Of a stretch of DNA of 64,000 bases, positions 1 through 17,950 are shown one piece after another. The notes beneath the pieces were generated by a model that saw nothing but the letters and a program-made list of their open reading frames with translations, ran no database searches and was not told where the DNA came from. The stretch comes from Salpingoeca rosetta. Taxonomy: Eukaryota; Protista; Choanoflagellata. The stretch is taken from positions 3,259,102 through 3,323,101 of the forward strand of contig JAWQFM010000001.1 of the NCBI GenBank assembly GCA_033442325.1, written 5' to 3'. The position numbers and the translations under genes are program-made. Positions within the stretch are counted from its first letter, which is position 1, and every line of letters begins with the position of its first letter.

Positions 1-1618
1 GCGAGCAGCAGCAACAGCAGCGATGACAACGACAGCAGTGACAACGACGAGAACAAGGTCGCATCAGCTCAAGCTGCAACCGCGTTTGTGACAGAGTATG
101 CAGGGCTGATGTGCAATGTGTTGAAGCAAGCCATGAGCACGCTGTTCCACCGCCCACCACGCAAGTGTTTGGCGCCGACCGCAGCCATCACACAGCTGGC
201 GGCGCATCACGCCTTGTTCAAACTGCACGCACACGTACAGCTTGCTGCAGACCCCAAACACAGCCAGAACAGCAAGAACAAGGACGTGAGCGGCACCTTG
301 CGCACGTGGGCGAAGGAACTTCGATCCTTCCTCGACGCAGCACTGCGCAGGGCTCGTGAGCAGGATGCATTGGACGCCACTGCCCAGTCCCTTGCAGAAG
401 CGCTGCTCTTCTTGCACGGCATGTGCATGCTGCACGCCGCCAGCAACGGCACCGAGGAAGATGATGGCAACGGCAATGGCAAGCGCCCCACAGCCACCCT
501 GTTTGCTGGTGCGTGCGGTGTTCTTGAGCGGATGTGTCTCGCGCTTCTGACGCACGCCGGGCGTGAATCCATCGCCGAGGAGGCAGCACAAGCCATGCAA
601 GCCCAGCACGCCCACATTTCCAGGCACAGCGAACGCGCCGAGAACGTTGTCGATGAGGATCAGGGGCAGCGCATTTTCTCTCACGCACAAGAACACCAAC
701 ACAGTGGCGCAGATAATGGACAGGATGGCAGCAAAACTGTGGCAGCAACGGCCCCCGAAAGTAGTCTGGAGCAGCTCTTGTGTGACATTGACTTGTTGGT
801 GCAGTCCGTCTCCAGCAGTCCCGCGCCAACACAAGCAATTCTCGATACGGCCACTACTATCGCCACCGCACTCGAAGCCTTCGGCCCTCAGCACGACCTG
901 TCCACCGCTCTTCTCTCGGATGTCATCACAGGCACTTCCAAGGCCCTGGCCCTCGCATATGGTGAGGGGCGTGTATGTGTGTGGGAATTTGTAGCTGCGT
1001 GTGTGAATTTGTCGCTCCTTTACGTCGGTAACTGAGGTGCACGGCATGTGCATGCTGCACGCCGCCAGCAACCGGCACCGAGGAAGATGATGGCAACCGG
1101 CAATGGCAAGCGCCCCCACAGCCACCCTGTTTGCTGGTGCGTGCGGTGTTCTTGAGCGGATGTGTCTCGCGCTTCTGACGCACGCCGGGCGTGAATCCAT
1201 CGCCGAGGAGGCAGCACAAGCCATGCAAGCCCAGCACGCCCACATTTCCAGGCACAGCGAACGCGCCGAGAACGTTGTCGATGAGGATCAGGGGCAGCGC
1301 ATTTTCTCTCACGCACAAGAACACCAACACAGTGGCGCAGATAATGGACAGGATGGCAGCAAAACTGTGGCAGCAACGGCCCCCGAAAGTAGTCTGGAGC
1401 AGCTCTTGTGTGACATTGACTTGTTGGTGCAGTCCGTCTCCAGCAGTCCCGCGCCAACACAAGCAATTCTCGATACGGCCACTACTATCGCCACCGCACT
1501 CGAAGCCTTCGGCCCTCAGCACGACCTGTCCACCGCTCTTCTCTCGGATGTCATCACAGGCACTTCCAAGGCCCTGGCCCTCGCATATGGTGAGGGGCGT
1601 GTATGTGTGTGGGAATTT

Positions 1619-1665
<47 letters not shown>

Positions 1666-4027
1666 TAGCTGTGTGTGTGTGGGGGGGGGGGTTGCTGTCG
1701 CAGTGTTGGTTTGCCGTGAGGCACCAGGTTGTGCATACACACGCGCGCTGGAACTGCCACGAAACATGTAGTGATAGTGAGTCCACCACCTAACGCCATG
1801 ACCTTGAAATGCGTGATGTGCACTGCACTCGGTCCATGACTACGTACAGGCCGTGTGTTGCAGAGCAAGGAGCGAAGCGGCACAGACGCGCCTGTGTGGT
1901 GCCGTCTTGCCACGGCAGTGAACCAGCTCTCTCAACACTTGTGCGACGCTGCTGATACGAAAACCACCGCGTGGCTGTGCCAGGTTGGACATGGTGTTGT
2001 CTCATTCCTCTGTGTGTGTGTGCTTGTGTGTGTGCTTGTGTGTGTGTGTGTGCTTGTGTGTGTGTGTTTGTGTGTGTGTGTGTGCTTGTGAGTGTGCGTT
2101 CGAGTGATGTGCGCTTGGTTTGTGTGCTGTTTGCCAGATGTTTGCGTACACGTGCGTGCAAGTGTGCGCATTGTGTCGTGTCTAAATTGGCCCGGCATTT
2201 CTTGCAACAATGCAGCACTGTGTCGAGCCGAAACGTTGCGTTCTGTTCATGAGCAGCCGCCAAACCGCCCGCCTTACCACTAATGTGCCATCCACACCAA
2301 CACCACACCGTACTAAACACGGATTCAGGCTCTCTGTGGGTTTGTCCGAGCAACTTGGCCCATCGTTACTGCTGCAGGTGCGATTTTCACTTCCCAACGT
2401 GTTTGCGGTCACCAATGTGGCCCAATGCCATGATGTGTTGCGTGGAACGCGTGCGGCTTGCATTCGCGCGGTTGCGCGCGCGTGTGTGGTTGTGAACATT
2501 TCGATGCTGGTGCAATCGCTCACGCCAAAGTTTTTCGTGCACGCGCCGCAGAAGACGGAGGCGATGGCGCCGCCGGTGAAAGCCTTTCTCGAGGCATTGC
2601 CTGCATGCACCTCTGCATCACCACAGACAACCGCTCATGCTTGGCAGAGGTTGGCTCATACACGATTCACACGTGTGTGTGTGTGAGTGAGTGTGTGTGT
2701 GTGAGTGTGGTTTGCTCGTGTGAGAAAGCGCGCGTGTATGCCTTCCCGCTTTGTTTTCCCTTGTACTTGTACACGATGCGCTCACTCACATTCGTCCAAA
2801 TCGTGTTCATGCTGCAGGATAATGTGAGCACGCTGCTGTCCATGTTCGACACACTCGCGTACAACACTGCCCTTGAGCTCTACCGATCGCGCCATCGTCG
2901 GCAGCGCCAACAGCAGCAGCAGCGCCACGAACTTCCTCTGTTGTGTGCGGTGCTCTCGTACTCCGCTGCTGTGTGCACCCACCAATCACCGGCAAGCGCC
3001 TCTGCAATCAAGCACAGGGCAGCACGCCGTGATCTCATGACAAAGGTGTGTGTGTGTGTGTGTGTTTGTGTGTTTGTATGTGTGTGTGCAGTCAGCGAGC
3101 AGACAGCGCATGTCGTGCTTATACCCATCACCGCTGTGCTGCTTGTGTGCATTGCAGTTTGTGCTTGGCCGCCATTGCGCTCCTCTCAGCTCACCTCCGA
3201 TTACACCGTACACCACCACCCTCGCCGATTGCTTGCGCACCCCCCCCCAAAACCAACCACTACCACATCACGCATGCATATCTGCGGCTGCAGCTGGCGT
3301 GTCGAACGCACGGCCAAGCAAAAGGCACTGCGATCAAGGCTGTGCTCGCGTGCATGGGGCGAACTGACCAGCAGGCGCGACTGTGCGCATGCGAAGATGC
3401 GGCTCTAGTCTGGTCTCATGTGCTTTCTGCAAACACCTCGCTCATAGCGATTGACACCGGTACATCAGACGCGCCTTGCCAACAGGAGCGGTTTCGCCTC
3501 GCATGGCAAACGCATGATGACACCACGGTCGCACCACAGCCAACGGCACCACTTCTTCCTCACCTGCTCAGGCAATTCCTCACTGATGCGGTAGGATGCA
3601 CACATACATGTGCAATTTTGCACGTGCGTGTGTCTGCTTGCACTTTGGCGGTGGAGGTTGAAATGTTGCACCTGTGTGGGAGAGGTGTGCGCGCGGTAAC
3701 AAGCCATCTTTTTGTTGTCAACGGCTGAGTGTTTTGCTCAACCCATTCAATGCATGCGCGTGTGTGAATGATCAACAACAGCCCGGTCCCAGCATTGCCG
3801 CTCTACTCGAGACACTGGCGCACCACAACCCAAAGGTGCACGTGACGGCACACACGCATGCGTACATGTTTGCTCGGCTGCGTTGCTGCTGATGCTTTGC
3901 TGTATCGTGTGTTGGTCTACTTGCGTATGTTTGCGTGTGTGTATGTGTGTGTGTGTGTGCGCGTGCGTGCGTGTGTGCGCGTGCGTGTGGGTGGGCGGGT
4001 CTACATGTGTGTGTGGGTGGGTGGGTC

Positions 4028-4066
<39 letters not shown>

Positions 4067-7000
4067 GCAGGGGTCCACTCTGTGTGTGTGTGTGTGTGCG
4101 TTGCGGCGGGTGTGCCTGCGCTGTAGCTTGGGTTTGTTTGCACATGTCTGTTGTCAATCCACTTGCACTTGGATCCAGTCCACCCACCTTGCACTCATTG
4201 CGCCCACGTTCCATTTCACCTGCGTCGCCACCATGTCCATCACCGTCACTGTACAGGCTGGCGCGTCCCGGGGTGCATTCATCCTCCTGCTTGTAGTGCT
4301 CGAGCACGCGTTGGGCGCGAGCGAGGGAACACGTGGCGGTCGTGTCGACGATGCAGTCCCAAGCATCACTTTGAACACCTTGACCAACGTTGTGCTGAAC
4401 ATTTTCCACTACAGGTGCGTTGGTGTGGCAGCTGTCTTGCGCTTGTGACATCGAGCGGGTTTGTGTGCCTCCTGCTGTCGTCACATGTGCCACTGTTCTG
4501 CGACTGACGTACTCCAACACACACACACACACAACACACCCCCCCCCCGCCATTCACAACGTACTGCTGGTACTTGTTCATTCCTATTCTTTCATCTGCT
4601 CCGCTGCGTTGACACACACACACGCACACGCACACTTGTGCACCAACGATTGCGTTGCAGGCTGCAGTTGGGTGTGCCAAAGACCACGGCTATTGCGGAG
4701 AGCTTGCTGTCCTCGTCCCTCCATGTGGTGTTTGAGAGTCTCTTAAAGCATATGGACACTCTGCTTGCTGCAATGTCACCGTCGTCGCAAGGCGTCACTG
4801 TCTCAACCAGCGCTGCGCGGGCCCTGCTTTTTGCTGATCCGACAACCGGTCTTGAGCCCAAGCCTTCGTCTGGCCTGGCCCCAGAGCTTTGCGCCTCCCT
4901 GTGCCTTCTCTTTGCCAGCAACTACGACGCGACAAACATGGTCCGCACCCTCATGTTTGTGATTTGCCAGCGAATTGATTGCAGTCAACTGCAGACACGC
5001 ACACGCACATGCACATATGTACGTGTCCGTATGTACACCCATGTGAAGCACGCCCACACGCTCACAAGTGCACACGACCACACGCTCACAAGTGCACACG
5101 ACCACACGCTCACAAGTGCAAACGCATACGCACCCTCTCTCCCCCCTGCCTCTTTCTCTCTTCCTCGCGACACACACACACATGTAAAATACATGTCTCA
5201 CTTATGTGTCTGCTTTCATGGAGCACCCGTTCTTACATGACATGCTTGTGCGTTTCACTATTCAGGGGCTGTGGCTGAACCAGTTGCAGTGCGTGATGCA
5301 AGATAAGGAGGAGGGGTGTCACGATGACTACGATGAGACTGCTGTCGTGTTCTCCCTGCTGCACAGACACTGGCTCTCCCTCTGTTCCACACTGGGCATC
5401 ACCAGCAACCACAACCACAGCAGCAGCTTGAGCAGCAAACGCAGTGAAGACAATGTGACGACAGCACATGGTGTCGCAAACACCGCCCGCAATGCAGCTG
5501 TTGAGGCGCTCACCGCTGCTGAGGATGAGCTGGATGCGTGTGTACAGCAGCTTGAAAGTGACGCACCGCACGTTGCCTTGCATTCGCTGCTCGCACGCGT
5601 GGAAGCGGGCACCTCCTTGCAGGCCACGCTGGACGCGACGCGGTGGCGAACAGTGTGTGCTTTTGGCCCTCTGGTTAACACGCGCGCGGTGCTGCTGCTG
5701 GGGCGGTGCTACGAGCACATGGGCTGGGTCAGTCATGCCACAGCGTGCTTTCGCCGCCTGCAAACGCAAGCAGGCCGTCTCAGCAGCAGCGGCGTAGACG
5801 CTCTTGCCCGCTCCCACATGGCCGACGTGCTGCTGTGGGCTGGGCGCGTTGACAGCGCACGCGAGGTACTTGACACACCAGCACGTCACGTCGTCGAATG
5901 CCCCACGCTTCCAGCACCGAGCAAAGACAACGCGACTGTCTCACCAACTGCACCAACATCTCCGCCCTCATCCGCACCGGAGCCCATCGCCTCCATGGCA
6001 GCGTGCACTCGGGCCGAGGTGCTCACACGCATGGGGGAGGCGACAGGTGCTGCGCTGTGCAGCTGCATTGCCACAGCAGCGGCAGCCGTTGTGAACACGC
6101 AACAACGTGTCAGCGCCATAAGGAACAGCTTGGCACACGACTGCTTGTCCACCTCTTCTCGTGGTGATGGACAGCCTCCCACGGGATGTGACGCGCACAA
6201 CCAACACCTTCTTCCATCTTGGCTGAGACTGCTTGCGGCTCGTGCACGCGTGAACGTGCACAACGCACTCTCCCACCAGGACACAGACTCTGGCGATGCA
6301 GTGGACGCCATGACCGCTGAGGTGAACAAGCTCAACATTGCAGACAGCAACCACCAGCAGCAGCGGCAGCATGAGGGGCAGGTGCAACCCATCCAAGAGC
6401 AGCAACAGCGTCGACAACAGCCACATTGCGGCCAGCGTCGCACGGAACGCAAGGAGGGGCGACGCGACACGACAAAGACGAACGAAGCGACACAGCGCCG
6501 GAGGAAGGCGGGCAAGAAGTGCACACCGCACGACGCGAATGATGATGCCAGTGTGAGCTGTGACAATGAGAGTCTGGGAAAACGCGAAGCTGCGGCCGCC
6601 TTTGACGCTGATGTGCGTCGCAAAGCGCTGTCGAAGATGCTGGTGAAGGAGCTGAAGCCGATGCTGAGGTCAAAGGGACTGAAGGTGTCGGGGTTGAAAG
6701 CAGAGCTGGTGGAGCGATTGTTGGAGGCGGAAGCAGAGGAGGTCGATGCCGCCGCCGTCGCCGCTGCTGCTTCTGCTGCTTCTGCCGTTGCAGATGCTAA
6801 CGCAGATGATGCAGAGGTACAAGAGGAGGAGGGAGGAGAAGAAAACGGAGGAGGAGCAGAAGAAGGAACGGGGAGCGAGGCGTGTAGTGACAATGACGGT
6901 GAAGCCTGCGAAGACTGCCTTGATGGCAGCGATGATGTGATGCAGCGCCCACAACTCGAGCTGGAGAAAGAGGAGCGGGACACGACTTATGCAGAACACA

Positions 7001-10000
7001 TGCGCAGCAGCCGAGTCCCTCTCTGCAAGGAGGATACAATGCACTGGCTGCAGCAGCACGCCAACCACCCTCTCGTAACCGTGACACCTTCTCCCGAAGC
7101 AGAGTCAAACACGGAGCCGCCCCCAGCGCAGGAGGTGCGTGTGTATCTGTGTGTGCGCATGCTTGCGTGCGTGCGCATGTACGTGTGTGCACGTGCTTGC
7201 GTGTGTGTGTGTGAGTGTGTATGTGTGTGTGTGTGCTCTTCACGTTGTCACGGTTGACACCACGCCAACCTTCTTTCAGCGTCCCCAAAATTGTTACTGC
7301 CACTTGTACATCAACACTTCGCACGCAAACACACACACACATACACTCACACACACGCACACATACACGTTTTGAGCAGGTCATTGCGCAACAGTGGAAG
7401 GCGGTGAATCAGCATTTTGCCTGGCGAGTTCAGGCTTCCGCTCAGACGAACAACAAACGCAAGCACTTTCAAGCAGCAGCAGCAGTAGCAGATGTGTGCG
7501 GACAAGATGCGTCTGTGAAGCAGATTGCGGCAAGTTTGCCGGTGGGCGTGGCGCTGTGTACGGTGTCGCGCCTTCAAGAAAGCACGCTGTTGCTGTCACG
7601 GGTTGTTCGGAGATGTGACGGCCAAGTGGAGAGCATTTCAGTGCCAGTGGTCGCCGACACCTGCGATGCATGGGGACACCAGGACGATGAAGACGCCATG
7701 AGCTGCGAGGAGGACGGAATTGCGAGCGGACCAGACGCGGTGATGGGCACTGCGGGCCGTCGAAGAAAACCGCCAAAGCTGGAGCTGTTCAAGCTGGAGG
7801 AGGAGGATGAGGAGGACGAGGACGAGGAGAAAGAGGGGAATGAGTGCGCTGGGTGTGCGGAGGTGGGAGAGGACACAGAAGAGACAGTGCAGACGAGGGT
7901 ACGTCGCAACAGCAGCAGCAGCAGCGGCAGCGGCAGCAGAAGGCGAATGAGAACACGTCGAACGTCAAGGCGACGCGTGTGTGAACAAGGGCTGCGGAGC
8001 GTCGTGGAAGGTGACATCATGGGCAGCAACGAGGGGTCAGCCGACATGAAAGTCACACAGTTTGGTCACGTGCGCCGGCGCTTTGAACCCCTCGTGGCGA
8101 CGGCAACGACATGCCAACGGCCTCGTCAACCGAGGAGCACGAACAACCGTACCACTGCCCGTGGTAGCGATGGCGATGGTGATGCTATTGCTGATATGGT
8201 TGTGCGCATGGCTGGCATCATTCAGGACAACAAGGCGTCGATTGCAATGGACGGCAGCACGCCGGAGGGCCGGCGGCGGTGGTGGCAGACGCGTCATGCA
8301 CTCGACGCACGACTGCAGCGCTTGCTTGAGGAGATGGATGAAGGCGTGCTTGGCCCGCTACGTGGCCTGCTTGGGGGCGAATACAGGAACCCTCAGCTCA
8401 ACAACTTCATCGACGATAAGGTGTCACAATTTGATGTCATTAATGTTTTGCTGTCTGGTGAAAATCAGGAAGCGCATCCTTTGGCATTGTGCTCATTCCA
8501 TACCTGGTTGTCCATATGTGGTTTTCTGCGTTTTACGTGCACCGGCACGTCTTTTTGAGTGCCGTCATGTTGACATCAGTGTGTTGCGTTTGTTTATTTG
8601 TTCTTGTTTTGTTTTTGTTTTGTTTTTTGGCCCTGCTCACACTCACAATGCTACTGTTGTGGTGTTGTCACAGGTGATCAAGCTTGAACAAGAGCTCGGC
8701 GTGCCTCAGCTCCAGCGGCCGCTGTTGCGTGCGCTGGTGTCCACTGTGACGGAGGATGCGTGTCGAGGTCGAGCGTTCAGTGCTCAGAGATGGTCTCGCG
8801 TGGCACATGGCCGCCTGCTTCACACCACAGTTGACGATGCACAGGTGAGGGAGGATTTGTGGAATGGGTACTGGCATGATGCGAACATGTGACGTGGCTT
8901 CCGTGTCAATTCATGGCCTTGTTTCGCTCTGCTAACCGTATTGAACCATTTTGCTTGGGTGTTGTTTCCTCGTTGGCACCCAGAACAACCTCGCCCCTGT
9001 GTTCTCGAGACTACACACCGACGCCCGCGCGTTTGCTCACGAGGTGAACACCATCCTCTGCTTGGCATGGCCGGGGGTGGAAGTGTGGTTGCCTGTGCTG
9101 CTGCTTCTCCTTGCACAAGTTACCTTCCTCTAACGAACGCATTGGCTGGTCCTCTGTGCTGTGTCATGACAGGTGCTTGGCCTCCCGACAGAAGCAACGA
9201 CAAGCGCAACAGGCGGTACGACAGCAGCCGCTGATGTCCCGGATACACCCATTGCCTTCTCCCGCTCGAGAAAGGGCAAGGCGCGCGCGCGTGTCAGGAG
9301 TGCGGCCGTACAATCCAGTGCAACAGCGGACACGGCCGTGCGACGCAAACACACCTCAGCCCCGGCGTCACTGTTTGGCTTTGAGAGCGACCCTGATGAC
9401 GACCACGAGCCAGTGGGGCCCGGCACCGCACAGGGCAGCAGCAATGGCGATGGCGTTGGCGCTGATGCAATGCGAAAGCGACAGGATCTTGTTGACAGTG
9501 CGCTGCAACGCGAACACACGCTGCTGTTGCTCGACGGCGATTTGCAGATGCTGCCGCTGGAATCCATGCCCTCTCTCCGGTCACAGCCCGTGTCGCGTCT
9601 TGTGTCGATTCAGCACCTGCAGCACTTGCTGGCGCTACATGAGAAACAGGATGGTTGTCACGATCAGCAGGACATTTGCACTTCCGTATCTCTCAGCAAC
9701 TGCACGTTCATCATCAACCCCGCAGGCGACCTTTCCGCCACACAAGGTCACAAAGCGTTTGATGCCTTTGCTACTTTGTTTGTGGTTGTGTGGTTATGTG
9801 TGTGTTTGCATGTGTTTTTTTTTTGTGTTTGTTTGTGTGTGTGTGCTTGCTTGATTTGTCTGTGTGTGTGTTTGTTTGTGTGCTTTGTTCCTTGAATATG
9901 CGCGTGTCCATGCATGAGTGCGCGTATTGGAACAATGCCTCCGATCCTGACGCATGTGCTTGTGCATGATAGAACGCATACTACCTGTGGTGAAGCGGCT

Positions 10001-10098
10001 TGGATGGAGCGGACATGCTGGGCAGGCCGTCACTGCAACGCAGGTGCGTGCTGTTGCAACGTGAGCGTGTTGGACACCCACACGGACACGCGAGCGCG

Positions 10099-10136
<38 letters not shown>

Positions 10137-11390
10137 CACACAAGCGCACGCACACACACACACACGCACGCACGCACGAAAACACACATGCAAGCGTGCC
10201 GAGACACAACAGCTTCGACACAGTATGTTCAACACTCATGTGTGACTGCTTGTGTTGACGTGTACTTGTAGTTTGCCGCGGCTGTGGAAGGGGCGGATGT
10301 GTTTATGTTCTGCGGGCACGGATCCGGCCGCAAATACATCCAGGTGGGCGCCTGCGTGTCCTGTTTTCACAACGCGTTTGAAGTGACTCTTTCAGATGGC
10401 CTGTGTGCTTCACCTGTGCGCCCAAACAATTACGCATTCTAGCACATATGTTCACAACACCCGCATATCTAACACGCATTCACGAACTCGCGTGCAACGC
10501 ATATATTTGGACACACACACTCGCTTACTGTACCTCCCTTTTCTTATTTTTGGCGCAGAGCGATCAAGCGCGCCGGCTGCAGGCGCGCCGCGGGATCATG
10601 CTGATGATGGGCTGCAGCAGCGGCCGCCTCAATCCACAGGGCTACGTAAGCTGCCCTGCAACAACACCCTCATGTACATCCTGATCGCGCGTGGCTGCGT
10701 GCATGACAGTGCGGCGGTGTTGCCGTGTCTGCACGCCACACCAACCTCGCACACACGCACACACGCACACACACACACACGCACACACGCACACACACAC
10801 ATGCATGCACATTCGAATACACACACACACACACATGCACACCTGCACACATGGACGTGTCGGCTGCATCTCAACCCCCTTGCCTCACCTTCTCAATCAC
10901 CTCCATGTGCCCTGGACCTATTGCTATGTCCTGCAGTACGATGCGGACGGGATGGTGCTCAACTTCATCGAATCTGGGGCGCAGGCCGTTGTCGCCAATC
11001 TTTGGGACGTCACCGACCTGGACATTGACAAGTTCACACTCCACATGCTCCAGGTGGGAAACATGCTTTGTGCGACAGCACCTGAATTGTATAACGCAGT
11101 GGACAGTCGGTCTGCCGGTGTCCATGCCACATCATGATCGCAGTTCGCCTGGCTAACATGATGCTCCATCCCCCAACCCCACCCCTCACCACCGCCACCA
11201 CTCTTCACCACTACCACAACTGCAGGACCTGGAACGCGTCAAGACAAGAAGTGGTGGTGATGTGCCTGAAGCGTGCAAGGGCCTGTGCGACCTTGTGGCA
11301 AAGGCGCGGCGTGAATGCTTCCTGGCATACCTCAACGGTGCTGCACCCGTTGTGTACGGTCTGCCCGCACACTTTGTGCCTGCAGCGTGA
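1..11390 (+). CDS. ESP1: Separase (peptidase C50), multi-exon, 5' end outside window
   Basis: Spliced C-terminal exons give the separase motifs RRWWQTRHALDARL (~8270), LLLLDGDLQMLPLESMP (~9520), FIINPAGDL, the catalytic His exon 10272-10343 (DVFMFCGHGSGRKYI), the catalytic Cys exon 10559-10645 (LMMGCSSGRL), VVANLWDVTDLDIDKF and YLNGAAPVVYGLP, with TGA at 11388-11390. Frame 1 is open from base 1. Exon boundaries in the upstream helical/TPR-like part are not all resolved. Confidence 0.93.
413..1620 (+). repeat. Near-identical tandem duplication (413-992 / 1038-1620) inside a separase exon; probable assembly artefact
   Basis: The copies differ only by extra C's near the start of copy 2 (caacc, aaccgg, gccccc). 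The junction is 45 bp of unrelated-looking sequence. Confidence 0.85.
6628..6732 (+). other. SAP DNA-binding domain embedded in the separase CDS
   Basis: LSKMLVKELKPMLRSKGLKVSGLKAELVERLLEAE matches the SAP consensus LxxLxVxELKxxLxxRGLxxSGxKxELxxRL. It is in frame within ORF 5206-7257. Confidence 0.85.
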
Positions 11391-11887: not shown

Positions 11888-14800
11888 CTAAAGGGAGGAC
11901 ACGCCCTCCCCAGGCTCTGCTCCATGTTCTAGGAGTATTTCCCTAGCTTCTGCAAACGATGGGCGATCCTGCGGATGTGTTGCCATGCAGCGCTCCGCTA
12001 GCGCCCGATACCAACCGTCAACAACTGCAGAGTCGTCGTGGGTGGGGTGGCGCGTTGTTGGTTTCGCAGCATGAGGGTTGAAGAACAGTGTCTCGTTGGC
12101 GAATCAAAGCAATCAATCGGCACGACAAGAAGGTTGACGAGAAACTCATGCACAAGAACTCGCTATCACTTGCGCAATACGCATGTGTGCACAAACACGC
12201 AAGTACACACAAACACGTAGGTACGCAGGGATATGCATTTGCGTGGAATCACCTTTAACCCCCCCCCCCACACACACACACTCACTCACACATACACATC
12301 TCATGCTCACACATGCACACATCACATATACATACACAAATACAACACATAGACACATAGACACGCACAGGCACACATACAACACACACACACACATACA
12401 TACACACACACACACACAACACAAACCTACCAGAACACGCTGGGCTGTCGTTGAAGCTGAGGGTCTTTCCTGCCGCAAGAAGTTGACACAAGACATCACG
12501 GTACCTCCCCGGCAGAGAATGCCCAGTTCTCCTCTTCTCCTGGGCCACCAAATCTGGCTGCTGCTCGGCCGCAAGCTCCCACATGAGCACGCCAAAGCTG
12601 AACACGTCTGCCTTGTTCGAGTAGCCCTCGCCAAGTGCCACCTCGGGCGCCATGTACGCGGGCGTTCCTGCGGCCCCGAGCTTGTTCTCTTCCTCCTGTG
12701 TCGTCAGGTGGTGGATTGTGCCAAAGTCGGTGATCTTCGCCCGCAAATACGACGACACCAGCACATTGCCACTCTTCAGATCCCTGTGGTAAGGATAACA
12801 CGCAGTTTAGCACACCCAAGCATCAGGTCGCGAACATGTGTGTTCCCGTGTCGGCATACGTACAAGCGAAACCTAGCACATGACACAAGGGGAGGGGGGG
12901 CACACAAGCACTCGCACATTCACCCACGGCACCCTGCTTCACCAAGATCCTCGTAGCATAAAGCTTTCTCCATTGCACAAGTAGCGAAAACAAACACAAG
13001 GTCGCCAAGTCGGGCTCCTCCCCCTTGACTTCCGCCAACACACAGGCACACACACACAGACACAGGCACACAGACACACAGACACAGACACAGGCACACA
13101 GACACACAGACACAGACACACACACACACGCACACATGCATGTACACACGTACCTGTGAAAGTGGTCGTTCTCGTGGATGTACTGCATACCGCGGCTGAT
13201 GTCCAGGGCAATACGCTTCTTCAGAGCCCAAACAGTGGCGGGCACGGCGACATGCTCATCAACATGTGCCGTTAACGTGACTGTGTGCGCCTGCTCAGTG
13301 TTCAGCTTTGGCACTGCACTGCGACGTCGGCGCCAAGTGCCTCGCCGCTCAGGCTCTGGGGCAAGCAGGGGGACACGAAGGCTCGTTGTTGTGGACATGA
13401 GGTCGCCGCCATCGCCACCACCACCACCACTACCAGCACCACCATCATCGTCATTTGCTGTCCTGCTGAGGGACATCTCCATGCCTTCCTGGCCCAGATT
13501 GTCCATGCCAATGGCAACGTCATCAAAGGCAAGCTCGCGCCTGAGATTTGTGAGCAGCGCTGCAAGCGTCTTTGTGCGGTTTGGGCCGCGTGCAACCCGC
13601 TCATCCACCGTGCCAAGCAGGTGGTCCAGGGAGCCGTGCGCGACAAACTCAAGCACGAGGAACGGGCACCCGTCGGGGGTCGTGCCGGCGCCAAAGAAGA
13701 GAACAATGTTTTCGCACTGCTTGCCGACCTCGCGCAGAAACTCCGCCTCCTTCTCAAACTCCTCGATGGTGTCCTCGTTGAGCTCCTTGAGGGCCTGGTG
13801 CAGGATCTTGACAGCCACCGTCTGCTCGCCGTACTTGGCGCGCTTGACCATGCCGTACGTGCCCTTCTCGACGACACCCTCAAAGTACAGGTGGTTGTAG
13901 GGGATGTGCCAGCTGGCCTTGAGCTTTGCCAGCTTCTCTTCGTTGGCGCGGATGATGCGCTTGTCCTTGGCGCGGGCGCGGTACTGCCAAACGAACACGG
14001 CAGACCCAATTGCCAACACCAGCCCGATGGACACACTGAGCGACGTGATGAGGATGATTTTGCTCCTGTCACTCACACAGCGCCCACCTTTGCTGACGAA
14101 TTCGTTGGCGCAAGTGCAGCGGAAGTTGAAGGAAAGCTGCGTCTGCAGCTGCTCTGGGTCGTCGCGCGGGCGCACGTGCACGTGGTCAAAGGAGGGCCGG
14201 CACACAACCGGTGTGTTCTGCATGGTGACCACGGGCGCGTCGGGCCGGTTTGGCGTGTCAAAGCGGTCCTGGCCAAGGAACTGCTGTGAAGACAAGACGA
14301 TGGGCCGGTTGGTCACGGCCTGCATCTGCAGCAGGCGGTCCATCCAAGGGTTGTCGCTGAAGTCGACCACTTCGCCGTTGAGGACGCACCGCTGGAAGAG
14401 CTCGGGCCCCTGCGCCTTGAGGAGCGGGTTGTCCACGCTGCGGTAGAAGAGGATGCGTGATCCCCACCCATTGCAAAGAGGGGCGATGGACTCCACGCGC
14501 GTGAAGGAGAGGTCAATGGCTTCGGCGCGGGGCAAGAGCAGCTGCGTCAGGGACGTGCACCGCATGAGCACCAGCTGTTCCAGCGCGTTTCGGATACGAA
14601 GGGTCTTCAAGTGCGCATTTTTTGGCATGAACACGGACCGGAACGTCTTCTGCGGGCACAAGTCAATGTGGACGTAGCCTGTGTTGGTGAGGGCAAACTC
14701 CTCCACATCGTCGTTCAGGATTTTGCACAGGGATTGGGTGCTGATGATGTTGTCGGTCATGCCTGGCCAGCCCGCCGCAAACCGCACCAGGTTGAGGTTC

Positions 14801-17568
14801 AGCCGCGTGAGCCGCTGCGGAATGGTGGCGGGCAGCTCCACCCCGGTGATGTCGAGGGCGCGCAGGTTCTTGGCGATGTCGTCCTCGGTGTGGTGCCTGT
14901 CATCCAGCGGGTCCAGGGGTCGAGCCTTTGAGTGTTCGAAGGAAGGGTCCGCGGCAAACTCGAGCGTGCTCAGCTTGGGAAGGTGGAGCAGAGGCACAAG
15001 GTCGACGTCTCGGATTCGGTGCCCGTTTGAGAGCAGGATGCGCAGGTTCTTCAAGGGCGAGAAATCTGGGAGCTCCATCAAGGGGTTGTTGTGCAGGCGC
15101 AGCTCCTCAAGGGAGGGAAGCGGCACGTGGCTGAAGGCGGTGAGCGAGTTGAAGGTGAGAATGAGCGTGTGGAGGTTCTGGCACGCGGCCAGGAGGCGGT
15201 CGTGGATCCGGTCAAGGAAGTTGCGGCCGAGATCGAGGTACTGCAGCTGGGACAACGAGGCAAAGATGCGGGGATGGAGGTCGTTGAGGTTGTTGTCATG
15301 AAGCGAGAGGGTGGTGAGGTTTCGCATACCAGTGAAGGCAAGCTCGTGCACGGACGCGATGTCGTTGCTGGTGAGGTAGAGCTCGGACAGGCTCACGAGG
15401 CGATTAAAGACGCCGCGCTGTATTGTGACAAGCCTGTTGTTGGTGAAGCTGAGGCTGGCCAGGCGGGTGAGGGGCGCCAGCAAGGAGCCGTCAATGGCGG
15501 TGATGCGGCCTTGAAACAGAAATAGCTCCTTCAGCATGGTGGTCGCGGTGAAGAGCCCCGGCGGCAGGGCTTCCAGTTGCGTGTTGGTGATGTGCAAGAC
15601 CTCGAGGCGGGTCTGGTGCTTGAAGACGCCGGCAGGCAGGGCCTCGATTGGGTTGTTGTCGAGGAACAGGTGGGTGACGGAGGTGACGGTGCTGAAGGCG
15701 TCTGGATCGAGGGTGATGATGCCGTTGTGTTTGAGGTTGATGGAGGTGATGTTGTCCAGGCCAGCAAAGCTGTGGGAGGTGAGGGTGGTGAGGCGATTGT
15801 CCTGGAGGTTGAGGCGCTTCAGTTTGGGGTTTCCTTGGAAGGCGTCGGTGTCGATGCGGCGGACCTGGTTGCGGTTCCAGTACAGCGTCTCCAGGTTGGG
15901 CAGGCTGGAGATTGTGCGGTTGGTGAGGATGGAGAGGCCGTTGCCGCTCACGTCGAAGGTTTTGATTGAGGGCCCGCGGATGAACACGTTGGTGTCGTTG
16001 TCTGCTTTGGTGGCGCGGAGCTCCGGCAGGTCGCTTCCGCTGAGGTCGACGGTGGTGATGGCGGACAGCGGGTTGAGGGTGGAAAGCACGAACATGCGGC
16101 TTTCCAAGCCATGGATGCCAATGGTGTCCACGAAGGGAAACTTGAAGGTGAGCACGAGCTCAATGTCCTCGGAGAGCATGCTGCCGGTGATGGTGAGGTT
16201 CTTTGGCTGAACCAGGTCAAACAGCGATTGCAAGAACTCTCTTCGGTTTTCGCTGGGCGGTGGCAGGGGCCGCTTCCCGGCCTCAATGTTCAGGACCAGC
16301 TCTGGGTTTTCGCGCGCGAAGGTGCAGTCGATGCGAAAGGCGGGGGAGATCTGGCAGATGACAGGCCGCTGCAGGACATCCGAGCCGGGGACGGTGGATG
16401 TTGTTGAAATGGTTGGTGCGGTGGTGGGCTGTGTCGCCGTGGTAGGTGGTGTTGCCTCACGTCGGACTCTGCTCAGTTGTGGCGGCTGTTGTGGCTGTCG
16501 GTGGAGCTGGTGTTGTAGTTGTTGCTGTGCGAAGTGGTCTTGTGCCAGTGTTGCCGGCTGCGCCGCGTATATGTGTGGATGCGGTGGTTGCTGTGGTGGG
16601 CGGTGTTGAGGCGGATGCTCATCCGGTGGAGAACGCGGGATGTGGCTTGCTCGACGTGGCTGCCGTGTCATCATCGTCGGTGCCGGGGTTGAAGGTGCTT
16701 CAGGGTCCCGTTTGTTGTCCTCGCGTAAGTGCTCAGGTGTAATGCGTGCGTGCTCTGTGTGGCTGTGTGCAGCGGGCGCCGTGTGTGGTCGCGCAGGCCC
16801 TGTGCGAGGCTGTGTTGCCGGGTTGGGGCCGGCGGTGTGTATCCTGTGCCAGGTGCAAAACAGCTCAATGAAAGACTCGAGTGTGCGTGCGTGGTCGCTG
16901 TGTTGTTGCCTGAGGGAGGCCGGTGATGGTGGCAGCGTGCTGTTCTTGCTGTTGGAGGGCACTGGGCCTGGGCGGCGCTCTGGTCTCTGTTCAGGATCAG
17001 TGTTTGTTGTAGCGCTGTTGCGGTACCATTCTTCGCCAATGGTGGTCATGGCGAGCAAGGATGCGCGAGCTTGTTCACAGGCCCGTGCGTGGGCTGTGCA
17101 GCCTGCACCGAGCCAAAACGTGGCCGGGTCATGCTCTTCCTTCTGCTGCACGATGTTGTCGAAGCGACTTGCTCCAGTTGCACCTGAAGTGCTCTTCTTG
17201 TTTGGGGTTGGACTGCTGCACACGCTGCTCTGGTCATGAGTGACAGTGTTCTTGTTCTTGGTGTTGTGCTCTTCATGTGTCAGCGCAGAGGCGGAACTTT
17301 GGGCGGGCACAAGGAGGAGGATAGCGATCGCCGTGACACAGGCAACAATGAGGCGTGTCCTTGGGCCGCAACTAGGACGAGCACGCAGAGAACCTTGGGG
17401 CCGAGTGCCATCCACTGCTTTGAAATGGGTACATGTGGCATCGCTGTGTTGAGCGTGCTGCTGAGCGTGCTGCTGAGCGTGCTGCTGAGCGTGGTGCTGA
17501 GCGTGGTGCTGAGCGTGCCGTTTTGCGCACCCAGCACGCCCTCCAGCCCCAGCCTGCACGGCCAGCAT
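11888..17568 (-). CDS. LRR receptor-like kinase (signal, pro-region, LRRs, TM, TKL-type Ser/Thr kinase), about 1634 aa
   Basis: Exons 17568-13154, 12783-12431 and 12024-11888, all GT-AG and in phase. It has an N-proximal hydrophobic segment (LIVACVTAIAILLLVPA), many LxxLxLxxNxL repeats and a TM (IILITSLSVSIGLVLAIGSAVFVW). Kinase motifs are VAVK, HRDLKSGN (across the splice), DFG, GTPAYMAPE, DVFSFG and CMATHPQDRPSF. It ends GVSSL*. Confidence 0.9.
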
Positions 17569-17950
17569 TGTCTTGTGGTTGTTGTGAACACGAGTGTTTG
17601 AGTTTGAGTGAATGAAGGGAGGGAGGAAGGAAGGGAGCAAGGGAGAGGAAGGAAGGAAGCAAGGGAGGGGAAGGAGCTAAGGAGGGAGGGAGGGGTGGAA
17701 GGATAGCTCGGTCTTGGGTGTGCTCTTGCTTGTGGTTTGTGTGGTGGGATTTTGAGCTTGCAGGCAGCGCGGGCGAATGAAAACGACAGGATGAAACGTA
17801 GCCAGGGAGAGAGGGCAAGATGGAAATTTGGCGTGTATCGTTCCCCAATCGCCACAACCCACGTGTGTTTGTGCGAAGAGGACAAGCAAGACGAACCAGG
17901 AAGCACCACACACATCACCCACACAGCATCGCACACCAGCCAACGCAGAC

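What the first reader, a model, noticed from the sequence alone, without database searches (positions are those of the whole stretch)
6340..7135. Separase with a SAP DNA-binding domain in its unstructured insert
Seen: a canonical SAP motif (6628-6732), flanked by basic and then acidic low-complexity sequence, in frame between the TPR-like helical region and the C50 protease exons. Known: animal and yeast separases lack a SAP domain, the equivalent disordered loop holds regulatory sites in vertebrates, and DNA stimulates cohesin cleavage by separase. Inference: this lineage may hard-wire separase to chromatin through an acquired SAP tether, an architecture I do not recall being described.
Basis: partly seen in the sequence, partly recalled or inferred. 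Interest (0 to 1): 0.72.

Follow-up and report, generated by a model that had tools for sequence, protein, structure and literature searches.

The report
Separase with an inserted SAP domain
The only separase gene of this protist, the protease that cuts cohesin to release sister chromosomes, has a small SAP nucleic-acid-binding domain inside the flexible loop before its protease part; no other separase sampled here has this, and it could be a built-in chromatin tether.

Summary
Pfam SAP matches window 6628-6732 above its curated cut-off (E 2e-8). A SAP profile built from the genome's other SAP domains, with this one left out, scores it 43 bits. An AlphaFold model (pLDDT 85) superposes on solved SAP domains at 0.6-0.9 A. 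A basic tract precedes the domain and an acidic tract follows it.

The SAP lies inside one 1,869-base exon (5266-7134). Intron-free transcript contigs from two studies join that exon, across a GT..AG phase-0 intron (7135-7379), to the Peptidase_C50 exons. One 6.8-kb contig spans everything to the last exon. Ten exons keep one frame (1,408 codons). The catalytic His and Cys are present. It is the genome's only C50 locus.

No SAP was found in 91 separase representatives from fungi, plants and other eukaryotes, in four further genomic separase loci, or in any solved separase. No paper in the searched library describes the architecture.

Two things remain open. The insert of close relatives (other choanoflagellates, if the genome is Salpingoeca rosetta) could not be retrieved, so age and conservation are unknown. 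DNA binding and chromatin tethering are inference only.

Verdict: a real, apparently undescribed variant of a known enzyme, of moderate interest.

The parts
1..5265 (+). 5' part of the same gene, not modelled: several N-terminal helical exons. The first exon starts about 670 bases before the window.
   Evidence: Transcript contigs extend 1,812 nt (X6) and 2,825 nt (X4) of mRNA upstream of 5265. Open frames on the + strand run from L003 into the window. No Pfam domains were found. Exon borders could not be checked here.
5266..7134 (+). SAP exon (623 codons): helical TPR-like part, P/S-rich linker, further helices, then the low-complexity insert that holds the SAP domain.
   Evidence: It is one stop-free frame, with acceptor AG at 5264-5265 and donor GT at 7135-7136. 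It is covered end to end by transcript contigs of two studies (table 8). hhalign places residues 139-203 on the conserved TPR-like pair of 28 separases (E 4e-4, probability 35%).
6406..6525 (+). Basic tract upstream of SAP: 15 Lys/Arg in 40 residues, including RRRK. It may act as a nuclear-localisation signal or an auxiliary nucleic-acid contact.
   Evidence: Composition count and motif scan. The function is inferred.
6628..6732 (+). SAP domain (helix, extended loop, helix).
   Evidence: Pfam PF02037 E 2.3e-8. Genome scan gives 39 bits at these exact coordinates. Leave-one-out HMM gives 43 bits. Invariant L, G, K, L, R, L positions are shared with ten other SAP domains of the genome. AF2 pLDDT 85. 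Structural matches to Tho1, DEK, E1B-AP5 and Hcc-1 SAP domains.
6706..6945 (+). Acidic and Ala-rich tract following SAP: 26 Asp/Glu in 80 residues, no Lys/Arg across 6766-6945.
   Evidence: Composition count. The single-sequence AF2 model of the exon predicts coil here, but that model is poor.
7135..7379 (+). Intron (245 nt, GT..AG, phase 0, TG/CA simple repeats) between the SAP exon and the first protease-domain exon.
   Evidence: It is absent from contigs X4 record 1 and X6 record 3, which abut 7132 and 7378 (a two-base tie, equivalent to 7134|7380). Raw RNA depth is 0.22 here against 5.5 in the next bin.
7380..8420 (+). Exon with the start of the protease (pseudo-protease/substrate-binding) region. 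It also holds a second acidic/Ser/Arg low-complexity insert.
   Evidence: Pfam Peptidase_C50 E 5e-12, profile positions 25-115. Matches to solved separases of Chaetomium, yeast and human over the WWxxRxxLD helix. An orthologous exon sits on marine metagenome contig L005.
8674..9043 (+). Two small exons (8674-8844 and 8984-9043).
   Evidence: GT..AG joints in raw RNA reads and contigs. The frame is kept.
9173..9746 (+). Central C50 exon.
   Evidence: Pfam Peptidase_C50 E 1.7e-17, profile positions 208-289. Joints on both sides are seen in raw reads.
9973..10343 (+). Two exons (9973-10043 and 10272-10343). The second carries the catalytic His in GHGSG, codon 10317-10319.
   Evidence: Joints in raw reads. 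Translation. The motif matches the separase consensus FGHGSG.
10559..10645 (+). Exon with the catalytic Cys in GCSSG, codon 10613-10615.
   Evidence: Joints in raw reads. Translation. The motif matches the separase consensus MGCSSG.
10937..11390 (+). Last two exons (10937-11053 and 11226-11390) with the stop TGA at 11388-11390. The C-terminus reads LNGAAPVVYGLP, typical of separases.
   Evidence: Pfam C50 profile positions 366-395. The loose end of reads after 11054 is found again at 11227. Consensus.

Best explanation
This is the single-copy separase gene of a protist, probably the choanoflagellate Salpingoeca rosetta. Its product, roughly 2,350-2,450 residues by estimate, carries a genuine SAP domain inside a roughly 200-residue low-complexity insert. 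The insert lies between the last TPR-like helices and the start of the C50 protease region, about 70-110 residues before that region. Four things are shown: the domain is real, it is in the same exon as separase helices, that exon is spliced in frame to the protease exons, and the mRNA is expressed. The mechanism is inferred. By this reading the SAP, helped by the basic tract before it, binds double-stranded DNA or chromatin. That would concentrate the protease where DNA-bound cohesin sits, providing in cis the DNA contact that is reported to stimulate cohesin cleavage by vertebrate separase. The following acidic tract may shield the basic elements until DNA competes. My odds: architecture about 0.93; nucleic-acid binding by the SAP about 0.6; a role as chromatin tether for cohesin cleavage about 0.4.
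For: SAP identity. Same transcript: X6 record 3 (6,849 nt) and X4 record 1 (5,255 nt) lack the intron 7135-7379 and the later introns. Six later junctions are also seen in stranded raw RNA reads, all with the first mate on the minus strand, which in most stranded libraries puts the RNA on +. The ten exons 5266-11387 keep one frame with no stop, 4,224 nt or 1,408 codons. Catalytic His and Cys are present. It is the only C50 locus in the 55.4-Mb genome, so the SAP-bearing form is the cell's separase. In run X20 read depth on the SAP exon is similar to that on the protease exons, which speaks against a dominant SAP-less transcript. Background for the mechanism: DNA binds separase and stimulates cleavage, and human inserts 1 and 2 are regulatory loops (PMC10317155; PMC12609080 citing Sun et al. 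2009). SAP domains contact DNA or nucleosomes in Tho1, DEK and Ku70 according to the PDB entry titles.
Against: There is no biochemical or localisation data. No orthologue's insert could be retrieved, so conservation, the best proxy for function, is unknown. SAP is a promiscuous module, and some SAP domains bind RNA or proteins. Disordered loops tolerate neutral insertions. In run X19 depth on the SAP exon is 2-3 times lower than on the 3' exons; this could be 3' bias or a shorter transcript. The 7134|7380 junction rests on assembled contigs from two studies. Raw reads across it were not listed, because the tool skips the simple repeats of the intron. Positional equivalence with vertebrate insert 2 rests on spacing only.
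Confidence: 0.5

Rival explanations
1. The SAP is a real domain in the real protein, but it is not a chromatin tether for cohesin cleavage. It may be a species-specific passenger tolerated in a disordered loop. Or it may serve another purpose: RNA or protein binding, nuclear retention, or regulation by a partner.
For: No SAP was found in 91 other separases or in four genomic separase loci, so separase clearly works without it. The insert is low-complexity and predicted to be coil. SAP-bearing proteins among the PDB matches include RNA-processing factors such as 3'hExo, SF3B2 and Hcc-1.
Against: The domain keeps all six positions invariant among the genome's SAP domains and folds with high confidence. 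It is at most 43% identical to any other SAP of the genome, so it is not a fresh, undiverged copy. It sits in the cell's only separase.
Confidence: 0.37
2. A shorter, SAP-less separase made from an internal start is the main functional form, and the SAP-bearing mRNA is a minor or readthrough species.
For: In run X19 depth on 5400-7199 (about 0.1-2.7) is lower than on 7400-9599 (about 5-9).
Against: Run X20 shows no such step. No cluster of molecule starts was reported near 7380. The frame of the exon beginning at 7380 has no Met for about 115 codons. Contigs of two studies carry the joined form. The helical N-terminal domains are needed for separase function in the species studied so far (established knowledge).
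Confidence: 0.06
3. The SAP exon belongs to a separate upstream gene, and the join is an assembly chimera.
For: The junction 7134|7380 is documented by de Bruijn contigs rather than listed raw reads.
Against: The contigs omit precisely a GT..AG intron and keep the frame. The same exon holds separase-type TPR-like helices. The unspliced frame runs into a TG-repeat and stops. Two independent studies give the same join.
Confidence: 0.03
4. The SAP match is a chance resemblance within charged low-complexity sequence.
For: The domain is only 35 residues long and sits between biased tracts.
Against: The Pfam score is 10 bits above the gathering score. The independent leave-one-out profile gives 43 bits. 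The AF2 model and its structural matches are all SAP domains.
Confidence: 0.02

Closest known systems
Separase (separin, Esp1/ESPL1; MEROPS/Pfam Peptidase_C50)
   Same: It has the C50 protease region with the catalytic His (GHGSG) and Cys (GCSSG), the typical C-terminus, a long helical N-terminal part with a TPR-like pair, and large disordered inserts before and within the protease region. It is single-copy.
   Different: It carries a SAP domain flanked by basic and acidic tracts in the insert before the protease region. No SAP is present in solved human, yeast or Chaetomium separases, or in 91 representatives from fungi, plants, aphelids and uncultured eukaryotes.
Vertebrate separase insert 2 (human residues 1278-1572)
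   Same: It is a long disordered loop emerging from the TPR-like domain and ending some tens of residues before the protease region. It contains acidic stretches.
   Different: The human loop holds autocleavage sites, a CDC6-like CDK1-binding motif, AIL3 and a PP2A-B56 motif (PMC10317155). In this exon neither an [SDE]xExxR site nor a B56 motif was found; the CDC6-like motif and AIL3 were not looked for. A folded DNA-binding-type domain is present instead. Equivalence of position is inferred from spacing, not from alignment.
Chromatin-acting enzymes and factors that use a SAP module (Ku70, PIAS/Siz1, DEK, Tho1, FAN1, SLX4, SDE2)
   Same: A small SAP helix-loop-helix is appended to a larger protein that must act on DNA or chromatin. 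Basic residues flank the domain.
   Different: None of these is a protease of the CD clan. Here the SAP is internal, embedded in a disordered loop of a 2,000-plus-residue protease.

Membership tests
SAP domain (Pfam PF02037) | Profile match above the curated gathering score | tested here: met
   33.9 bits against a cut-off of 23.9, E 2.3e-8. 39 bits in the genome scan at 6628-6732.
SAP domain (Pfam PF02037) | Bipartite conserved pattern: hydrophobic/Leu positions in helix 1, an invariant Gly in the connecting loop, and K..L..RL in helix 2 | tested here: met
   L19, G32, K34, L37, R40 and L41 are invariant in the alignment with ten other SAP domains of the genome.
SAP domain (Pfam PF02037) | Helix, extended loop, helix fold | tested here: met
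   AF2 model with pLDDT 85, H16-25, loop, H34-54. Best structural matches are SAP domains of Tho1, DEK, E1B-AP5 and Hcc-1 at rmsd 0.6-1.8 A and probability 0.96-1.0. The Foldseek E-values are weak (0.1-0.5), as expected for 40 residues. This is a prediction, not a solved structure.
SAP domain (Pfam PF02037) | Binding to DNA (or another nucleic acid) | not testable with these tools
   Needs EMSA or fluorescence anisotropy with the purified segment.
Separase (Peptidase_C50, PF03568) | C50 profile match above the cut-off | tested here: met
   Exon-wise hits of 46.1, 64.1 and 32.9 bits, each above the 27.8 cut-off, cover profile positions 25-115, 208-289 and 366-395.
Separase (Peptidase_C50, PF03568) | Catalytic His-Cys dyad in the conserved GHGSG and GCSSG contexts | tested here: met
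   His codon 10317-10319 and Cys codon 10613-10615. Consensus of 28 separases.
Separase (Peptidase_C50, PF03568) | Long alpha-helical (HEAT/TPR-like) N-terminal regulatory region on the same polypeptide | tested here: inconclusive
   hhalign puts exon residues 139-203 on the conserved TPR-like pair with E 4e-4 but probability only 35%. The secondary structure is helical in a poor AF2 model. Transcript contigs extend at least 2.8 kb further 5'. The 5' exons were not modelled.
Separase (Peptidase_C50, PF03568) | Cleavage of the cohesin kleisin at anaphase; inhibition by securin | not testable with these tools
   Requires biochemistry or genetics.
Vertebrate-type regulatory insert 2 | Autocleavage-type [SDE]xExxR sites and a PP2A-B56 motif ([LFM]xx[IVL]xE) in the loop | tested here: not met
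   A regular-expression scan found no ExxR-type site and no B56 motif in the SAP exon. The CDC6-like motif and AIL3 of the human loop were not scanned for. The loop is therefore treated as positionally similar only, not as a member.

The most novel reading that the evidence does not exclude
The basic tract, SAP domain and acidic tract together form a DNA-gated switch built into separase. Off chromatin, the acidic tract would mask the SAP/basic elements, or the basic substrate-binding and DNA-binding patches of the enzyme. On chromatin, DNA would displace it and both tether and activate the protease. Cohesin cleavage would then be restricted to DNA-bound complexes by the enzyme's own architecture. 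If the cassette is shared across choanoflagellates, it would be a distinct evolutionary solution to the DNA-dependence of cohesin cleavage in the sister group of animals.
Probability: 0.1. Interest if true: 0.8.

Novelty: new variant of a known kind. Interest (0 to 1): 0.5.

Why it matters
How separase is focused on chromosomal cohesin is only partly understood, and so is why DNA stimulates cleavage. Current structural work still lists DNA contact as a possible specificity factor (PMC12609080). A natural separase with a dedicated DNA-binding-type module would be a ready-made test case. One could delete or swap the SAP and ask whether localisation, cleavage efficiency or anaphase timing change. 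If the organism is S. rosetta, transfection is available (PMC6333174, title and abstract as listed). The sister-group position to animals would make the comparison with vertebrate insert 2 informative. If it turns out to be a species-specific passenger, it is merely one more example of domain accretion in a disordered loop.

Tried and rejected
1. Word-index protein searches came back blank: the whole SAP exon, its helical part and the conserved end of the next exon. The length window (at most 1.75 times the exon) excludes full-length separases, and low-complexity words crowd the candidate list, so these blanks say little.

2. The big HMMER search with the central C50 exon gave 91 hits. The nearest relatives were only fragments. 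P0001 (48% identity) sits on the 1.4-kb Logan contig L004. P0002 sits on the marine metagenome contigs L005 and L006. L005 starts in a CAG repeat about 200 nt before the orthologue of the exon beginning at 7380, so the insert is not covered.

3. A metagenome scan with an alignment of that exon's end returned one spurious locus, L019.

4. The ESM Atlas feature search gave only weak TPR-like leads, all 0.84 or lower.

5. The supplements of the choanoflagellate transcriptome paper hold no separase or C50 entry.

6. Single-sequence AF2 of the whole SAP exon gave mean pLDDT 43.6, unusable beyond secondary structure.

7. Non-canonical joints in contigs (5608>6760, 6371>6764, 6780>7471; side 21-22 nt) were rejected as chance overlaps of GCT/CAG simple repeats from other transcripts, not SAP-skipping isoforms.

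All searches were exon by exon and by reference, and frame continuity was checked arithmetically.

Full report
WHAT IS THERE

The + strand of window 5206-7257 is one open frame. Pfam SAP (PF02037) matches residues 475-509 of it with E 2.3e-8 and 33.9 bits, against a curated cut-off of 23.9. A six-frame scan of the whole 55.4-Mb genome finds 13 SAP matches.

I fetched the other SAP segments and aligned ten of them with this one. The six positions invariant across all eleven (L, G, K, L, R, L) are all kept here. The closest of the ten is 43% identical. An HMM built from those ten without the separase copy scores the exon 43 bits.

Sequence searches of the PDB, with the segment and with the eleven-sequence profile, return only SAP domains at the top: E1B-AP5, MKL1, Tho1, Hcc-1, Ku70, pTAC3 and Siz1. 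An AlphaFold2 model of 6598-6762 built with that alignment has mean pLDDT 85 and the helix, extended loop, helix layout. Its best structural matches are the SAP domains of Tho1, nucleosome-bound DEK, E1B-AP5 and Hcc-1, at rmsd 0.6-1.8 A and probability 0.96-1.0. The Foldseek E-values are weak, as expected for 40 residues.

A basic tract lies at 6406-6525 (15 K/R in 40 residues, including RRRK). An acidic, Ala-rich tract lies at 6706-6945 (26 D/E in 80 residues, no K/R across 6766-6945). The motif is not a chance match.

IS IT PART OF SEPARASE?

Peptidase_C50 matches lie downstream on the same strand, each above the family cut-off. They are in the exon beginning at 7380 (profile positions 25-115), in 9173-9746 (208-289) and in 10937-11053 (366-395). 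These are the only C50 matches in the genome.

Reads and contigs of four public runs were laid on 5200-11199. Two runs of different studies (X4, X6) are kept as assembled contigs that lack introns. X6 record 3 (6,849 nt) covers these pieces in one molecule: 5265-7132 | 7378-7786 ... 7954-8418 | 8672-8841 | (61 nt) | 9171-9744 | 9971-10041 | (71 nt) | 10556-10645 | 10937-11054, and it continues at both ends. X4 record 1 (5,255 nt) shows the same 7132|7378 abutment and extends 2,825 nt further 5'.

With the two-base tie resolved, the intron is 7135-7379, GT..AG, phase 0. Six downstream junctions are also seen in stranded raw RNA reads (X19, X20). Nearly all reads have the first mate on the minus strand, which in most stranded libraries puts the RNA on the + strand. 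Reads of the same orientation cover the SAP segment itself. Depth in the intron bin is 0.22, against 5.5 in the next bin.

The loose end after 11054 reappears at 11227. This defines a last exon 11226-11390 that ends in a typical separase C-terminus and a TGA stop. With the refined borders, the ten exons from 5266 to 11387 keep one frame without a stop: 4,224 nt, or 1,408 codons. The catalytic His (GHGSG, codon 10317-10319) and Cys (GCSSG, codon 10613-10615) are present and match the consensus of 28 separases.

The N-terminal 200 residues of the SAP exon are helical. hhalign places residues 139-203 on the conserved TPR-like pair of separases (E 4e-4, probability 35%). The next exon begins with the motif that opens the protease region in other separases, and its WWxxRxxLD helix aligns with solved Chaetomium, yeast and human separases.

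So the SAP sits in a roughly 200-residue low-complexity insert that ends about 70-110 residues before the protease region. This spacing resembles that of human insert 2, which spans residues 1278-1572 (PMC10317155). The equivalence is inferred from spacing only. Of the vertebrate loop's motifs, the two scanned for (ExxR cleavage-type sites and a B56 motif) were not found.

The 5' part of the gene runs from about 670 bases before the window through several exons up to 5265. It was seen as open frames but not modelled. I estimate the full protein at roughly 2,350-2,450 residues.

Every search was exon by exon and by reference.

CAVEATS ON THE TRANSCRIPT EVIDENCE

The 7134|7380 junction rests on assembled contigs from two studies. 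Raw reads across it were not listed, because the tool skips the intron's TG/CA repeats. In X19 depth on the SAP exon is 2-3 times lower than on the 3' exons, while X20 shows no such step. At these depths (154 and 39 reads) this is compatible with 3' bias. A minor SAP-less transcript cannot be excluded.

HOW COMMON IS THE ARCHITECTURE?

An HMMER search of 1.84 billion cluster representatives with the central C50 exon gave 91 proteins, 46 of them 850 residues or longer. Those that carry names come from fungi, plants and an aphelid; the others come from metagenomes and Logan assemblies.

Pfam scans of all 91 found C50 in 89 and SAP in none of the families listed. Three single-member families of the second batch were not displayed. 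I therefore also ran the local SAP HMM, whose best score on the 91 was 3.9 bits.

Four genomic loci with whole separase genes from uncultured eukaryotes (L020-L023) have no SAP in any frame, while the window scores 43 bits as positive control. The SAP profile finds no separase chain in the PDB up to E 10. That tests directly the statement that human, yeast and Chaetomium separases lack SAP.

Full-text searches found no paper describing a SAP domain in a separase. The two papers that hold both terms use them in unrelated contexts. The survey of separase regulatory domains does not mention one (PMC5921967).

The public InterPro/UniProt architecture tables could not be checked. An automatic annotation of this gene may already show both domains there.

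WHAT COULD NOT BE LEARNT

The closest relatives in the databases are fragments: P0001 at 48% identity, and P0002 on marine contigs. Their contigs stop short of the insert. Three word searches and a metagenome scan were blank or spurious. Whether the SAP is shared by other choanoflagellates is therefore unknown.

The genome size (55.4 Mb) agrees with my recollection of that species' genome size, but I did not verify the identity.

MECHANISM

The structural facts above are shown. The rest is inferred. SAP domains are small DNA- or chromatin-binding modules found on many proteins that act on chromosomes (Tho1, DEK on the nucleosome, Ku70, PIAS/Siz1; entry titles). DNA is reported to bind separase and stimulate cohesin cleavage (PMC10317155; PMC12609080 citing Sun et al. 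2009).

The most economical reading is that the SAP, with its basic tract, gives this separase a cis-acting nucleic-acid anchor that concentrates it on chromatin-bound cohesin. The acidic tract may modulate this. I put the architecture at about 0.93, nucleic-acid binding at about 0.6 and the tether role at about 0.4.

The main rival, at about 0.37, is a real but functionally different or neutral insertion in a tolerant loop. An internal-start isoform, an assembly chimera and a chance motif are each unlikely.

VERDICT

This is a new variant of a known enzyme. It appears undescribed in the searched literature. It is of moderate interest because it makes the role of DNA contact in cohesin cleavage testable in a tractable relative of animals.

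Noticed in passing
window 486-992 and 1114-1620: There is a 507-nt tandem duplication at 100% identity, with 628-nt spacing, inside the 5' part of the same separase gene. Each copy holds the end of a coding exon plus the first bases of its intron. The copies are out of frame with each other, and a stop follows the first. This is either a very recent duplication or an assembly artefact. It affects how the N-terminal exons should be modelled.
   Followed up: partly
window 12823-17640, minus strand: A convergent neighbouring gene: a 1,605-codon open frame with many leucine-rich repeats (LRR_8, E 3.5e-58) followed by a protein tyrosine/serine-threonine kinase domain. This is a receptor-kinase-like architecture. 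The kinase domain seems to continue in further exons towards 12440.
   Followed up: partly
window 7690-8080 (inside the exon beginning at 7380): A second low-complexity insert lies within the protease region, between its first strands and the WWxxRxxLD helix. It has an acidic run, then a Ser/Gly run, then an Arg-rich run including RRRK. It is much shorter in the marine orthologue L005.
   Followed up: no
L003 6430-6530 (about 1.5 kb upstream of the window): A run of N (a gap or a withheld stretch) and very long CTG/CAG-type simple repeats lie upstream of the gene's presumed start.
   Followed up: no
L005/L006 and the 12-member cluster of P0002: Marine (TARA and other) metagenomes hold a separase about 45% identical in the conserved blocks, with the same exon start as 7380. 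It is probably from an uncultured relative, and longer contigs of it would settle whether the SAP is shared.
   Followed up: partly
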